A stretch of 64,000 nucleotides of DNA from Iphione sp. A-MEVVRFRX5 (lineage: Eukaryota): NCBI GenBank assembly GCA_976226885.1, contig OZ320313.1:145452001-145516000 (forward strand), written 5' to 3'. Position numbers and translations under genes: made by a program. The notes under the pieces are model-generated. The model was not told the DNA's origin and ran no database searches. It saw nothing but the letters and a program-made list of their open reading frames with translations. This document shows positions 7,659 through 31,276 of this stretch, in pieces. Positions within the stretch are counted from its first letter, which is position 1, and every line of letters starts with the position of its first letter.

Positions 7659-8261
7659 TTAAGAAGACGTGGCAAAATGCTTCAACCAGCTGATGCTACC
7701 TTGATAGAAGTGAAAATGTTCCACTGTAACTGCCGTTGCTATGACAAGTCATGATTCCCATTGTGACATCATTGCTCACTATGGTGCCTCACTAGGTGAT
7801 TAAACAATATCTGTTTTGGTGGCATTTGGCCCATTAATCACTCATGTAGTCAGAATTTGATAATTCTGTTGTCAAGAGAAAGGGTGTTTCTCTTTGTGAG
7901 GTGTTTGTGATCAAGGTTTCGCCATTTGTGGCTCATCAGGCATCTTTTCTTTGTGCTGGTATCAAGGCATACAACAATTGTTGAATTTTGTCCAATGTCT
8001 CTTTTTGGGAGATTGGCAATGTGTTGAGACCTGTCTAGCTTTGGTGTAAATTTACACCTTCAATTTACTCAGATGTAAAGGTGAGTGTCCTCCCAGTATC
8101 CATAAAAATTTTTCATAGAGCCAAATTACTCAGAGACAAAATAGAACGCAATTGGATTCACCGTCTCCGCACACAAATCCCACAGGGATTAAATTTGATA
8201 GACGCCCCAGTTTATCATTGAGCCTCAGATCAACAGGACAAGAGTGTCCTTCCCATTTGCC
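7659..8261. mobile_element. Penelope-like retroelement remnant: GIY-YIG endonuclease C-terminus on + (8051-8221) preceded by an apparently inverted segment
   Basis: + frame reads SDVKVSVL...LRDKIERNWIHRLRTQIPQGLNLID, matching the PLE endonuclease tail RxxxExxWIxxLxTxxPxGLN. A 15-bp direct repeat aaggcttccataata lies at 7644-7658 and 8262-8276. Confidence 0.7.
7917..7939 (-). ncRNA. Hammerhead ribozyme catalytic core (stems I and III not formable; degenerate)
   Basis: Minus strand reads CUGAUGA-GCCA-caaa-UGGC-GAAA, an exact core with a 4-bp stem II, ~130 bp from the PLE endonuclease remnant. Confidence 0.45.
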
Positions 8262-12715: not shown

Positions 12716-15700
12716 ATGTCAGTGAATTCCTGTTGAATCTGTGTAGATTCCAAGTTTTTTGTTTAAATATTGTTGAACTCCTGTCGAATTTATATAAATT
12801 GCAAGCCTTTTATGCAAATTATATGCAAAGTATATAAAGAATTTTGTATGCACTAACATATGTAGATTGTTTCTCATCGTTTTTACCTCATCCAAAGTCT
12901 ATCTGCTGTATATTACTGTGCGTTGGTGCGCAAAATTATTGAGAATTGTTCAATAATGAACAATGCAAGGCAACACATACAGATGGTACATGCACATAGA
13001 CACCCTTCATTGAAATCACCGTGCTCACACACAAATTCAGGTAAGGAAACCAGGCCTAATTGGGAAGTGAGACAACAGGCCCTGTGACATTCTGTTTTTG
13101 GAAACAATAGAAGATTCATCTTCGCCTCCCCAATATACATGTCCATGTTTATCCTTTCTTCGGTATTGTCATAGACGACAGTCTATGGCTCAAGTACTGT
13201 ACATGAATAAAAGTGGTGTTTTATAAGTGATATTAAAGTTATGAAAACTCTAATCCTCTGACGATTCTGTTTAAATAGATTAGTTTTCGAACACCGGAAG
13301 TCATTCATGGAATTCTCCTAATAAACATCTGTTGATCATGTTTTAATTTTAAATTAAGTCTTTGAGTTCGAGAGAGTCATTTCTGCAGTACTTGGGTTTT
13401 TATTTAACGACTTAACGACCTGATACATAAAAAAAACCACATAAAACTTTCGCCTGCCTCACTTCCCCCACGCTTCGACGCTTCTGGAAGAGTTCGCACA
13501 CACGCCTGTAATAGCCATGCATGTTCCTGTTTCGCTGTATGTGGTTGACGGTGTTTCCCAAGGCGCCTAACCCTATATCAGCTCGGTAAGCCAATGCGTG
13601 TTAACACGCTCGGTTGTGGGTGCGATGATAAGTGTTTATTGACCGAGAATCCGAAATAAAAGAGCTAGCATGGTTTTGTCACCATTTGTGCCGGTTATTA
13701 AAACAGCTGATAAAAAAAGTGAAAGCAGAAGTACGTAATGCTTGAACTTCGTGCATTGCCATAGTGGATACCGAGCGGTGAACCACTTCTAGAAGATAAA
13801 TGGAAGATGACGATATGTTCAGGTCCCACGATGTATGATGACTCGCACATTAACCGCCAAGTTATCTAATCATTTTCATCTGTGATTGAAAGTGAACAAG
13901 AAACGATACATAATGTAACTGTGCAGAAGCCAAAGGGATAAAAGAAAAATCACTTGTCGGCCTCTGATTAATATATTCATGGATAATCATCATAAAAAAT
14001 ACATGCATAATTTCTTTCGTCCATATTTTACTGCTGCTAGAAATGCCAACGCGAGTTTCTTTGCGATGGAATCGTATTAAGATTTGTCATTTCGGGCGGT
14101 CCTGATCAACCAACAAGTCGTGGAAAATATGGGCGAAGCCAAAGTATGCGACCTATAACACCATGCGAGCATCTTTTTCCGGGATTGCTGGGAGGAATGG
14201 AATGAACTTTTCAAGCAGTCTTTAACATCCGCGTGGCATATTTTGAATGCCTTTGGTCCAGCGTTTTGGCAGGGGAGTAGTTCCGTTTGCCTTGCCATTC
14301 GGCTCTTCTACTGCAGTTCGTGACATCAGCTGATGAGGGTTAAGTTGAGTCGAAACCCGTTGCCACCAGGAGGTGCTGCGTGGTGACAGACACAGACGCC
14401 TACTGTTTACACGCGGGTCATGGCGAGAGTCAGACGTCTTATGAGGTCCTTGGCAACCCCATGTGAAGTATATGTGACCACAGTAGTGGCGCCTGACCAA
14501 TGAGATATCTCCGTGGCCTCAAGCCACCTGTTTTTAGCTCACGTGTCCACTGCAGCGCAGTTTCAGAATATCACACGTTAAGCCCATATTCGGTATAGCA
14601 TCACTGAAGTGATTCATTTAATAGTCCAGACGACTTTTTTTTTTATACAAAGGAGACATTTTCCCCATTCCAGTTGATTCGTATGTTTCCACTGATTTTT
14701 GCCTGGAACTTACATGCCCGGATCTTCGAGGCATGGCCACATTTTGTAGCAGATCAAAAGGACCAGTTGACCCCTAGAGGAGGAGAAGGGGAGGTGTGTG
14801 GGACGTTTGGTACTGTGTACGAGAAAGTATGAGATAATAACCGTAAACTTCTTTAGGCGCGGGTGCCCACCGACCCCTTCCCCGCCCGCCCACCTTGCAT
14901 CCACTACTTTTGTCTTCTACGTTATGAATTCAGCAAAGGTTACATGCACTGAGCTGTTGTTTTTTTCCAGATTCCTTTGTCCTCTAATGCAAGTGCAGCC
15001 GTCGTTTTTTTCCCATTCACCACGAATTGTATCTAGCTTAGAAAGCAGTGAAGGCTGTTTTTCTTAATACCATATGTATTCTTCACGTATTCTAATCTGG
15101 TGAAGTTTTGGCGGGAACTGTACAGGGGATTTTATAGGCTGCGTCATTAATCGAAACATGGTCCGGTCTGAAAGTCCAGGACGCGCTATCGTTCTACCGT
15201 GAGTCTGACATCAGCAGCAGTATGAATGTCGTCTGGTGGTGACCTTATCGGGACGCCGCCATAAGGGGGCAGACCTGTTTTGAACCTCAGGTGTGATTCG
15301 TACACGTTTCTTCCCCATACCACACCCAACCATGCGACGTAGGCCCGGACGTAGGCCAGCACGATCCCTAACCAGCCACTGCAACACACCATCTTCCGTT
15401 GTGGGAGCGAACGACGGTGACAAAGACATTAAACTTGAATTACCGTCATCGTTGATGCGCACCATGGTGATTCAGCCAGTGGTCCACGAACAGCAAAGCG
15501 CACGGGTCACGATCTCAAAGCTGTGGACATGACTGTCTTTACGTGACACTGGCCAAAGTGACCGAAACTTTGTTCGATATAGTTTATCCGAAGTGTTGTG
15601 ACCAGTTATCCGCCGTTTAGTTAAATTCTTTTCTCAGAGGTAAATATCACTTTCAGAATTGCGATTACTTTTGTATCATATCAGTGATTCATGGAAACTC

Positions 15701-29360: not shown

Positions 29361-29821
29361 TGCTACTCCTACTCTCATTCATATATGACCTCCATTTGCA
29401 GCATTCGCTGCACCTACAGCTTGTTTCTTTCTTGAAATCCAAACTGTAGCTGTATACAACATATTTACTTTCACACGTGTTCCTGGTTCCACAGTTCCCA
29501 TTTTACCAGCGGAGTATACGTCTGTGACTATTCACAAGGTCTCAGCCTTCCCGAATCAAGAATTGAACACTGAACCTCTTTCTCACTCTATTCAGCAAAG
29601 GTACGTTTTTAATATTTTCCCAGATTGGGAAGTACATGTACATGTGCTGCCTTTACCATACCAAGGTGATACACTCAGCTTTGTAAAGCGTACAAGCGTG
29701 TCCTGTGAAGTACGGTACATGTATCTGTTTCGGCATTGGGCAGTGGCCCAAAGGTGACTGTTGCGTGATCATCTTAACAGAAACGAATACATGTATCTTA
29801 ATATGTTCTAATATCCACTAG

Positions 29822-29964
29822 CCTATCCAATATCCACTATCATTTAGCCTGATGAAGTTCTCGTGAGAGGACGAAACGTTGCTCCCATCATTGCTCCCCT
29901 TTAGTTAATAAAGTCCTAAGTTCCAGAGACTCTGTTGGTTGGGTGTCTTTTGTCCTAAGTTAAC
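29822..29964 (+). mobile_element. ~143-bp hammerhead-bearing mini-element (solo PLE pseudo-LTR or retrozyme-like) with a candidate 9-bp TSD
   Basis: atccactag at 29813-29821 and 29965-29973 flanks the ribozyme and a downstream AATAAA (~29907). Confidence 0.55.
29846..29883 (+). ncRNA. Minimal type-I hammerhead ribozyme (PLE/retrozyme type), predicted to need dimerisation
   Basis: AGC-CUGAUGA-A-GUUCUC-GUGA-GAGGAC-GAA-ACGU-U-GCU. Stem I is AGC/GCU, stem II is 6 bp with a GNRA loop, stem III is the loopless palindrome ACGU, and the triplet is GUU. Confidence 0.8.
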
Positions 29965-31276
29965 ATCCACTAGGTAATCTTCACCTCTCTCATTGATGTC
30001 AAGATTCAAGATTATTGCGCAGAAATGTCATCCTAGCTGGATGATTTTTTAAAAATTATTTTAAAAAATTGTTTTCATAAGTAGATGTTGGTGTTTTGTC
30101 TTGTTTTGGGGGGCCTTTCTTTACACCCTCGTCCGTGGAGTACACCTCATCGTGAGTGTAGATCTACGGTATACATGTACTTTCTGAGTTTCATAGAGAA
30201 GTTAGTGAAACACGTTGCTTACGTCATTTCTTTTTTTATCTAGAAAGCATTAGCTCTCCGGATTCGTGAGTGAGGCCGCCGCAAAGTACGCGCTGGCCTT
30301 CAGCTACCGTGAACTTGTTCTTGACCACCTGTTGTCTGAGGATGCGCTCCTAAAAATACATAATGGCCGATTAAAAACAAAAACAGTGTGGGCTATAGGT
30401 CAGCAGGGTGCACTTGGAGTGAGGGACTTATATTTGTAGCTAGACCTCATCGTTAGGTCTGGTCACTGAGTCAGCTGCTCGGGCTTGTCACCACACCCAC
30501 TGCTGTGGGTAGAAGGCGGCACCATGTATCGTTCAACGATTATCGCCTTTCCCTCCGCCGAATGTTTGACAGAAGTAGTCATCACACCTGTGCCGGTGGG
30601 AATTTCGTAAGCCGCTCTCCCAAAGCATGGCCCAGCTGCACCCGTTTCGCAAGGGTTATTCCAGACTTCCTGGAGTGGTATTGGAATGGGGAGAAAATGT
30701 TGCTTTGCATGTTTTGGTCGGTTTACTGCGACCACCTTCACTTCATCAACGCATTCTTCGAAGAAATGTTGACCCAAACTTCGAACTAAGATTTCTTTGT
30801 TACCATTTCTTTTGTCTCCGATCAGAAGTTTTATTATGGTGGTATCAGAACTAGGAAGTGAAAGCTTGGAACTGTTCTGTAGCCTTCCAACCAAGCCACT
30901 ACGACTTCAATCCGTTCATTTTACTCAGCTTGATGAACAAAAACTTAAGAATGAAAGGGGATCGGTGGCGATACCTGCGTTTGCCATCCGCGTGCGTTTG
31001 TATGCTTTTTGTTAAGCATGTTGGTTTCAATGGAGGGTGTTTCTGACCTGTCTGTGCGTTTGTGTGCATTTGTTCATTATTGGTCTTAGCTCGTTAATTT
31101 AACACTCGGACATCAACGCTAAAAAGTCTAGTGCAGATATCCTTTGACGGAGGGGATGTTTAACATGATTACGGCATTACAGCACTTTACAGCACATTTA
31201 CGTACAACTATGCACAAATTGGGCATTAGGTTGCGTGAAAACAAAAATGCATACCAACACACCCGGGGGTGTAATA

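What the first reader, a model, noticed from the sequence alone, without database searches (positions are those of the whole stretch)
29813..29973. TSD-flanked ~143-bp mini-element carrying an intact dimer-type hammerhead ribozyme
Seen: a complete hammerhead core, a 6-bp stem II capped by a GNRA loop, loopless palindromic ACGU in place of stem III, a GUU cleavage triplet, AATAAA ~25 nt downstream, and a 9-bp direct repeat (atccactag) on both sides. Known: minimal type-I hammerheads with palindromic stem III are associated with Penelope-like pseudo-LTRs and retrozymes and cleave as dimers. Inference: this is a non-autonomous ribozyme-containing retroelement mobilised on its own, with no PLE ORF next to it. 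If transcribed within a desert-spanning RNA it could cleave that RNA. Stem I is only 3 bp, so activity is uncertain.
Basis: partly seen in the sequence, partly recalled or inferred. Interest (0 to 1): 0.72.

Follow-up and report, generated by a model that had tools for sequence, protein, structure and literature searches.

The report
Truncated Penelope retroelement copy with hammerhead
The stretch is a real small hammerhead ribozyme motif, but it sits in a dead 125-base tail-end copy of an ordinary Penelope-like jumping gene that is abundant in this genome, a kind of sequence described since 2014.

Summary
The motif is far from chance: a strict pattern for it matches 368 times in the genome against 2 for the reversed control, and helices I and II covary.

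It is not a separate mini-element family. Window 29840-29964 matches only the last ~125 bp of the 454-496-bp terminal repeat (pLTR) of full-length Penelope-like elements (PLEs) in this genome. Those elements have an RT + GIY-YIG ORF between two 99.5%-identical repeats. The window copy's nearest relatives are longer copies, and short and long copies are interspersed on the tree.

The ribozyme is the published PLE "min-HHR" (Cervera & de la Peña 2014). This copy is solitary, about 24% diverged from its nearest relative, and has no partner for a dimer. Cleavage of a host transcript is unlikely.

One result goes beyond a plain truncated copy. About 47% of 80 sampled ribozyme-bearing copies share the same short form. 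Their target-site duplications place the 5' end 4-14 nt before the CUGA box in 14 of 16 cases. That points to a defined RNA 5' end at a conserved TCATTT block, not random truncation.

The scan reached the same reading before on other DNA of this genome (s1-334836). No RNA runs were listed, so expression could not be tested.

The parts
29811..29822 (+).
   Evidence: It matches 29962-29973 at 11 of 12 positions. Under this reading 18 extra nt (29823-39) lie between the repeat and the family homology.
29832..29839 (+). Inner copy of the repeat (ATCCACTA), directly abutting the start of family homology. This is the more likely left TSD.
   Evidence: It places the 5' end 9 nt before CUGA, inside the -4..-14 cluster seen in 14 of 16 TSD-defined short copies.
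29840..29964 (+). Retroposed 3'-terminal fragment (~125 bp) of a Penelope-like element pLTR
   Evidence: It aligns to the last 119-129 bp of two full-length PLE units at 74-76% identity. nhmmer with a profile of long copies gives E=5.8e-31 and matches only the 3' part of the profile.
29840..29845 (+). TCATTT block, unpaired in the ribozyme model. It resembles an initiator (TCAKTY).
   Evidence: T, C, A and the second T after the A are each at least 90% conserved in 42 long copies. Reading it as a transcription start is inference.
29846..29883 (+). Minimal type-I hammerhead: helix I AGC/GCU, CUGAUGA, bulged A at 29856, 6-bp helix II with GUGA loop, GAA, ACGU, U17. The cut falls between 29880 and 29881.
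   Evidence: Covariation on 78 distinct copies: 84.5% of cells paired against 67.3% in shuffles, and 148 double-change cells against 58, with 0 of 500 shuffles as high.
29907..29912 (+). AATAAA, part of the family-wide conserved block AGTCAATAAAGTCCC
   Evidence: A role as poly(A) signal is inferred only.
29936..29961 (+). Conserved 3'-terminal block (TGGTTGGGTGTCTTTTGTCCTAAGTT), where all family copies end
   Evidence: TSD-defined 3' ends fall 106-124 nt after the C of CUGA. That is 74-92 nt after the cut, close to the 85-92 nt reported for the Anolis PLE (PMC11167929).
29965..29973 (+). Right copy of the direct repeat (ATCCACTAG), the TSD
   Evidence: Among short family copies, repeats of 9 nt or more occur in 16 of 35, against 6 of 600 mismatched control pairs.

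Best explanation
Window 29840-29964 is an old, inert retrocopy of the 3' end of a Penelope-like retrotransposon (PLE). It was made by that element's RT and GIY-YIG endonuclease and is flanked by a target-site duplication.

It carries the family's minimal hammerhead because that ribozyme lies in the last ~125 bp of the pLTR. It is not an independent non-autonomous family.

Shown:
- homology to the pLTR ends of full-length PLEs;
- covariation in the ribozyme's helices;
- the flanking repeat;
- interspersion of short and long copies on the tree.

Inferred: the copy belongs to a discrete short class whose template was a short RNA. That RNA began about 10 nt before the CUGA box and was reverse-transcribed from the usual internal start site about 84 nt past the cut. 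The likeliest origin of that 5' end is a transcription start at the conserved TCATTT inside the pLTR.

The ribozyme here is probably non-functional. It has no dimer partner, a 3-bp helix I, and a competing fold that pairs part of the CUGAUGA box with CAUCA.
For: Copies and the parent element:
- At least 40 genomic hits at 73-80% identity all cover query 28-150.
- Pairs of copies 4.5 kb apart are 99.5%-identical repeats of 454-496 bp.
[quoted passage not shown] The two ORFs are 75% identical to each other.
- The ribozyme segment is the 3' end of that repeat.
- The window matches only that segment, and no RT is found in the window.

Ribozyme:
- 368 pattern matches against 2 for the control.
- Helix II pairs and helix I pair 2.3-1.3 covary.
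- Every feature matches the published PLE min-HHR: long helix II, unpaired nucleotide after A9, short helix I, palindromic 15.2-16.2 (PMC4209133).

Lineage:
- The window groups with the long copies L053 and L063.
- The short/long label is not clustered on the tree.

Short class:
- 38 of 80 sampled copies have 59 nt or less of homology before CUGA.
- TSDs of 9 nt or more occur in 16 of 35 short copies, against 1% in the null. They put the start at -4..-14 in 14 of 16.
- L091 carries a template-jump duplication whose two segments both end at -9/-10.
- In L057, internal ORF sequence is joined directly to position -9.

Fold: the minimum-free-energy fold of the window copy pairs part of the CUGAUGA box with the downstream CAUCA.
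Against: - No RNA data could be obtained, so neither the proposed RNA 5' end nor the copy's silence is shown.
- No empty-site allele or paralogous empty site exists in the assembly.
- The left junction is ambiguous: the repeat occurs three times.
- In my sample, full-length elements always carry about 330-370 nt of pLTR before the ribozyme, and none starts at -9. A start at TCATTT therefore cannot be the only 5' end of template RNA.
- For 19 of 35 'short' copies the boundary rests on loss of BLAST homology only.
Confidence: 0.85

Rival explanations
1. One reading: a separate non-autonomous, ribozyme-bearing retroelement family (retrozyme- or SINE-like) that propagates from its own master copies.
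For: - The short form is discrete in size and makes up about 47% of sampled ribozyme-bearing copies.
- One well-supported clade of 8 sampled copies contains only short forms.
- A 2026 preprint argues that animal retrozymes derive from PLE pLTRs (10.64898/2026.07.22.740005).
Against: - Short and long copies are interspersed across subfamilies: 24 changes against a shuffled mean of 27.
- The window's nearest relatives are long copies.
- Even the short-only clade has two relatives 4.7 kb apart on one strand, the spacing of pLTR pairs in full elements.
- There is no tandem array at the window copy.
- Short copies lack the conserved pLTR sequence upstream of TCATTT.
Confidence: 0.08
2. Plain random 5' truncation. 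The reverse transcriptase simply fell off, and the clustering of 5' ends next to the ribozyme is a sampling artefact.
For: - PLEs are known for heavy 5' truncation (PMC8557442).
- My sample required an intact core, so shorter copies were invisible.
- BLAST end points are noisy.
Against: - The density of 5' ends drops more than tenfold beyond about 20 nt upstream.
- A query made only of the part after the cut found 9 of 11 copies reaching through the ribozyme and only 2 shorter. A steep exponential fall-off would give the opposite.
- Two chimeric copies have their junction at the same -9/-10 position.
Confidence: 0.2
3. A domesticated or host-relevant ribozyme that cleaves a long transcript crossing this gene-poor region.
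For: The catalytic core is intact in this copy.
Against: - At about 24% divergence from its nearest relative, an intact core can survive by chance.
- No second family ribozyme lies in the window for dimer formation.
- Published single min-HHRs did not cleave, and dimers cleaved only weakly (PMC4209133).
- No RNA run was listed for the region.
- There is no ORF of 180 aa or more in the window.
Confidence: 0.03
4. A chance match to the hammerhead consensus.
For: Rfam models give no hit. A loose core pattern finds one unique, unstructured match elsewhere in the window, at 14330.
Against: 368 matches against 2 for the control, covariation, and membership of a repeat family.
Confidence: 0.01

Closest known systems
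Minimal hammerhead ribozymes (min-HHR) in the pLTRs of metazoan Penelope-like elements (Cervera & de la Peña 2014, PMC4209133)
   Same: - Type-I topology.
- No helix III hairpin; a palindromic ACGU instead.
- 6-bp helix II with a G10.1-C11.1 pair.
- An unpaired nucleotide between A9 and G10.1.
- A 3-4-bp helix I.
- Location in the pLTR.
- Hundreds of variable copies with compensatory changes, most of them solitary in truncated elements.
   Different: Nothing essential. Helix I in this copy is at the short end (3 bp). Activity was not tested.
5'-truncated PLE insertions, with internal initiation of reverse transcription (Frangieh et al. 2024, PMC11167929; Craig et al. 2021, PMC8557442)
   Same: - A sharp 3' end 74-92 nt after the ribozyme cut site (85-92 nt in the Anolis element).
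- Variable-length TSDs.
- Heavy 5' truncation.
- A parent with RT + C-terminal GIY-YIG between pLTRs.
   Different: - Here nearly half of the sampled copies stop within about 10 nt just before the ribozyme. I did not find this pile-up described in the papers I read.
- The parent elements carry an extra conserved C2H2 zinc-finger ORF.
Drosophila virilis Penelope promoter (Schostak et al. 2008, PMC2377424)
   Same: The transcription start lies inside the pLTR. The promoter is TATA-less and internal, of the Inr + DPE type. In the window family TCATTT fits TCAKTY. In subfamilies whose helix II begins GUC, GGACG lies at +28..+32 from its A.
   Different: - In Penelope the start is about 120 nt before the ribozyme, with a 75-bp intron between them. 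Here the inferred 5' end abuts the ribozyme.
- The DPE-like match is absent from subfamilies whose helix II begins GCC.
- No start site has been mapped here.
Animal non-LTR retrozymes (Cervera & de la Peña 2020, PMC7229834; Li et al. 2026 preprint)
   Same: A small non-coding unit with a type-I hammerhead related to PLE pLTRs, presumably mobilised by PLE proteins.
   Different: Retrozymes are tandem repeats of about 170-400 bp that yield circular RNAs. This copy is solitary, 125 bp long, and has no sign of a lineage of its own.

Membership tests
Hammerhead ribozyme, PLE min-HHR subtype | Catalytic core C3-U4-G5-A6-N7-G8-A9 ... G12-A13-A14 ... U16.1-H17 | tested here: met
   CUGAUGA 29849-55, GAA 29873-75, A15.1 at 29876, U16.1 at 29879, U17 at 29880.
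Hammerhead ribozyme, PLE min-HHR subtype | Helix II with a G10.1-C11.1 pair, supported by compensatory changes | tested here: met
   Three pairs have 31-42 double changes among 78 copies. G-C at the first pair in 66 of 78 copies.
Hammerhead ribozyme, PLE min-HHR subtype | An unpaired nucleotide between A9 and G10.1 | tested here: met
   A at 29856. It was fixed by the search pattern in the 80-copy sample, but it is also present in the BLAST-found copies with a recognisable core.
Hammerhead ribozyme, PLE min-HHR subtype | Short helix I (published as 4-5 bp) that pairs the flanks of the core | tested here: met
   3 bp in the window. The pair 2.3-1.3 covaries (UA 40, AU 15, GU 6, GC 2). A fourth pair forms in about 55% of copies.
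Hammerhead ribozyme, PLE min-HHR subtype | A palindromic 15.2-16.2 in place of a helix III hairpin (dimer-type) | tested here: met
   ACGU 29876-79. In-silico cofolding forms an intermolecular AACGUU duplex.
Hammerhead ribozyme, PLE min-HHR subtype | Self-cleavage | not testable with these tools
   No RNA runs were listed. Published min-HHRs cleave weakly, and only as dimers or with the element's protein (PMC4209133, PMC11167929).
Rfam hammerhead families (covariance models) | Score at or above the gathering threshold | tested here: not met
   No hit at gathering score or at E<=10. This is consistent with the absent helix III hairpin. It lowers membership of those curated models, not the hammerhead reading.
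Penelope-like element (as a truncated copy) | A parent with an RT and GIY-YIG endonuclease ORF between direct pseudo-LTRs | tested here: met
   L031, L032 and L033 carry repeats of 454-496 bp at 99.3-99.6% identity. L031 and L032 carry RVT_1 + GIY-YIG ORFs; L033's ORFs were listed but not scanned. The window itself has no ORF.
Penelope-like element (as a truncated copy) | Colinear homology to the element's 3' end, with a TSD | tested here: met
Non-LTR retrozyme | Tandem head-to-tail repeats, each carrying a hammerhead | tested here: not met
   No tandem repeat at the locus. No second family ribozyme in the window.
Non-LTR retrozyme | Circular RNA products | not testable with these tools
   No RNA runs were listed. 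Read laying was therefore unusable.

The most novel reading that the evidence does not exclude
The PLE pLTR in this animal fires a transcription start 7-10 nt before the ribozyme's CUGA box, at the conserved TCATTT. The min-HHR would then be the extreme 5' end of the element's RNAs.

The downstream pLTR would produce a ~125-nt 'ribozyme-only' RNA that the PLE machinery retroposes in large numbers, giving nearly half of all ribozyme-bearing insertions. That would be a defined, recurrent by-product class, and a plausible stepping stone from PLE pLTRs to animal retrozymes.
Probability: 0.3. Interest if true: 0.45.

Novelty: new member of a known kind. Interest (0 to 1): 0.2.

Why it matters
On its own the locus is ordinary: one of hundreds of truncated Penelope copies carrying the small hammerhead that has been known in these elements since 2014. 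It should not be counted as a new mobile-element type or as a host ribozyme.

The modest added value lies at family level. The 5' ends of short copies pile up just before the ribozyme, and two chimeric junctions fall at the same point. This suggests a defined RNA end there. If confirmed by 5'-end mapping, it would place the ribozyme at the very start of PLE transcripts. That bears on the still-open question of what these ribozymes do, and on how retrozymes arose from PLEs.

Tried and rejected
1. Rfam scans gave no hammerhead hit.
3. Empty site: the left flank is unique, and the right flank holds only an unrelated ~55-nt repeat. There is no paralogous or haplotig empty site.
4. An alternative type-III-like ribozyme. 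Here the conserved upstream GCAAC(A)GUU/GCCAAG would supply helix III, the cleavage site and helix I. Helix III is 88% paired but invariant. Helix I pair 1.3-2.3 pairs in only 12 of 37 copies, against 33 of 41 for the min-HHR helix I. Rejected.
5. The upstream palindrome as an RNA hairpin: covariation is no better than in shuffles.
6. DPE-like GGACG at +28..+32 from the A of TCATTT: it fits only subfamilies whose helix II begins GUC, so it is kept as weak speculation.
7. A splice acceptor before TCATTT: AG is present in only about half of long copies. Rejected.
8. The short-only clade as an autonomous mini-family: it has relatives 4.7 kb apart on one strand.
9. Copies of the form [125 bp]-ORFs-[pLTR], expected if TCATTT were the only start, were not found. 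L100, L057 and L083 were extended and none is such an element.
10. The large protein searches were not used, because Pfam already settled the ORF.

No full-length or ORF consensus of the element was built. I used only a profile of a ~335-nt non-coding repeat segment for boundary mapping, and printed a conservation line for a 240-nt non-coding stretch.

Full report
**Observation**

- CUGAUGA lies at 29849-55, followed by an extra A at 29856.
- Helix II is GUUCUC/GAGGAC with a GUGA loop (29857-72).
- GAA lies at 29873-75, ACGU at 29876-79 and U17 at 29880. The predicted cut is between 29880 and 29881.
- Helix I is only 3 bp (AGC 29846-48 with GCU 29881-83).
- AATAAA lies at 29907-12.
- atccactag occurs at 29814-22 and at 29965-73.

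Rfam does not call the motif, at gathering score over the whole window or at E<=10 on 401 nt. The curated models expect a helix III hairpin, and this motif has none.

The motif is still far from chance. The pattern CTGANGAA-N14-18-GAAACGTYGC matches 368 times in the 1.18-Gb genome, against 2 for the reversed control.

**What it belongs to**

BLAST of 29813-29973 against the window's own genome gave at least 40 hits at 73-80% identity. Nearly all cover query 28-150, which is window 29840-29962. The recognisable copies keep the core while helix II changes by compensatory substitutions.

Three pairs of hits lie 4.5-6 kb apart on one strand. In each pair the hits are the 3' ends of direct repeats of 454-496 bp at 99.3-99.6% identity. 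[quoted passage not shown] The two ORFs are 75% identical.

That is the defining architecture of Penelope-like elements. The window matches only the last 119-129 bp of these units. A translated search with the RT-EN protein finds nothing in the 64 kb. A profile built from long copies aligns to window 29828-29966 (E=5.8e-31) and uses only its 3' third.

**The ribozyme**

I aligned 80 copies: the window plus 79 taken in listing order from the pattern hits on two chromosomes.
- 84.5% of helix cells pair, against 67.3% in shuffles.
- There are 148 double-change cells, against 58 in shuffles (0 of 500 shuffles as high).
- Sliding the partners by one to three columns destroys the signal.
- Helix II pairs 2, 4 and 5 covary heavily. 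So does helix I pair 2.3-1.3 (UA 40, AU 15, GU 6, GC 2).

The architecture matches point by point the 'min-HHR' that Cervera & de la Peña described in metazoan PLE pLTRs. The shared features are a long helix II, an unpaired base between A9 and G10.1, a short helix I and a palindromic 15.2-16.2. Those authors found most copies solitary and 'probably related to truncated PLEs'. Single motifs showed no detectable cleavage, and dimers were weakly active (PMC4209133).

In the Anolis element the ribozyme needs the element's protein, and it is dispensable for insertion in vitro (PMC11167929).

**Is it a separate mini-element?**

No. On a tree of the shared 127 nt, the window copy groups with L053 and L063, which extend further upstream. 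The short/long label needs 24 changes, against a shuffled mean of 27, so short copies arise all over the family.

One well-supported clade of eight copies is short-only. A search with one of its members still finds two relatives 4.7 kb apart on one strand, which is the spacing of pLTR pairs in full elements.

There is no tandem array at the locus. No second ribozyme of this family lies in the window.

**Boundaries and TSD**

The repeat occurs three times:
- aatATCCACTAG at 29811-22;
- aatATCCACTA at 29829-39;
- aacATCCACTAG at 29962-73.

Family homology starts at TCATTT (29840), directly after the inner copy. The simpler reading is therefore a 125-bp insert with an 8-bp TSD in a target that already held a near-duplicate. 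No empty site exists in the assembly to decide between them.

**The short class**

Of 80 sampled copies, 38 show 59 nt or less of homology before CUGA. A second group stops at about 300-400 nt, which is the pLTR start.

Among 35 short copies, 16 have flanking direct repeats of 9 nt or more, against 6 of 600 mismatched control pairs. In 14 of those 16 the repeat puts the element's first base 4-14 nt before CUGA, often as (g)gTCATTT. The 3' ends lie 106-124 nt after the C of CUGA. That is 74-92 nt after the cut, as against 85-92 nt in Anolis.

A query made only of the post-cleavage part recovered 9 of 11 copies that run through the ribozyme and 2 that are shorter. A steep random fall-off does not explain the pile-up.

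Two chimeric copies point to the same spot:
- L091 has a partial ribozyme segment followed by a full one, and both begin at -9/-10.
- In L057, RT-coding sequence is joined directly to -9.

One further copy, L116, starts exactly at the cleavage site and has a 14-bp TSD.

**How it most likely arose**

Three steps are shown: retroposition of a PLE 3' end; a 3' boundary consistent with internal initiation of reverse transcription; and a non-random 5' boundary.

Two steps are inferred. First, the template was a short RNA with a real 5' end at about -10. Second, that end is most simply a transcription start at the TCATTT block.

The case for a start site:
- TCATTT is at least 90% conserved in 42 long copies, although it is unpaired in the ribozyme.
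- It fits the insect initiator consensus TCAKTY.
- D. virilis Penelope has its start site and an Inr/DPE internal promoter inside the pLTR (PMC2377424).

The case against it as the only start: no full-length element in my sample begins there. In addition, the DPE-like GGACG fits only some subfamilies.

**Function of this copy**

It is probably inert.
- It is about 24% diverged from its nearest relative.
- It is solitary, and helix I has 3 bp.
- Its lowest-energy fold pairs part of the CUGAUGA box with the downstream CAUCA.
- No ORF of 180 aa or more lies in the window.

**Alternatives tested**

A type-III-like fold using a conserved upstream palindrome was rejected on pair counts. The palindrome itself shows no covariation above shuffles.

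**Earlier scan notes**

The scan already reached the same reading for a 123-bp insert elsewhere in this genome (s1-334836). It had also noted the extra zinc-finger ORF and split hammerheads in other PLE lineages. I confirmed the first independently on this copy. I saw the other two in passing.

**Verdict**

The locus is a new member of a well-known kind and of low interest. The family-level pile-up of 5' ends is a modest lead.

Noticed in passing
window 7690-7990, minus strand: A second, different hammerhead of the 'split' kind.
- The core is CUGAUGA-GCCA-CAAA-UGGC-GAAAC at 7939-7916.
- An 8-bp helix III pairs ACCUUGAU (7917-7910) with AUCAAGGU (7705-7698), 217 nt further on.
- Next comes A17, with the cut between 7697 and 7696.
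- GCAUC then pairs with the GAUGC just before the core.
- The core region belongs to a repeat family with at least 206 candidate copies, including a pair 5 kb apart.
   Followed up: partly
L031:4104-5165 (-) and L032:6672-7310 (+): The full-length PLEs carry a conserved second ORF after the endonuclease. It encodes a C2H2 zinc-finger protein, 52% identical over 160 aa between two subfamilies. In L031 it runs into the 5' part of the pLTR. Canonical PLEs are described with one ORF.
   Followed up: partly
Alignment A2 columns 32-50, about 50-70 nt before the ribozyme in long copies (for example L035:747-765): A strongly conserved palindrome, AGCAAC-n-GTTGCYAAG, in the pLTR. Its 3' half repeats the GUUGC of the cleavage site. 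Covariation is no better than in shuffles, so it may be a sequence-level (DNA or protein-binding) signal.
   Followed up: yes
L116 (G000:C13:88601737-88601801, minus strand): A family copy with a 14-bp TSD (cagaaaaaagattg). Its first base coincides with the predicted hammerhead cleavage site. This is the product expected if a cleaved RNA had been copied to its end.
   Followed up: partly
L091 (G000:C1:145312483-145313567) and L127 (G000:C1:63679500-63686300, minus strand): Two chimeric copies. L091 has a 34-nt partial ribozyme segment followed by a complete one, and both start at -9/-10. In L127, RT-coding sequence is joined directly to position -9 of the ribozyme segment. Both look like template jumps from an RNA 5' end.
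   Followed up: partly
L049 (G000:C1:47662273 and 47662366): Two ribozyme cores of one subfamily lie only 93 nt apart, head to tail. This short tandem could allow dimer formation.
   Followed up: no
window 14330-14361 (+): A CUGAUGA...GAAAC match without a credible helix II. The surrounding 161 nt are unique in the genome. It is taken as chance; about one such loose match per window is expected.
   Followed up: yes
window 29999-30053 (+): A ~55-nt stretch just right of the insert has four other copies in the genome at 86-88% identity. It is an unrelated small repeat.
   Followed up: no
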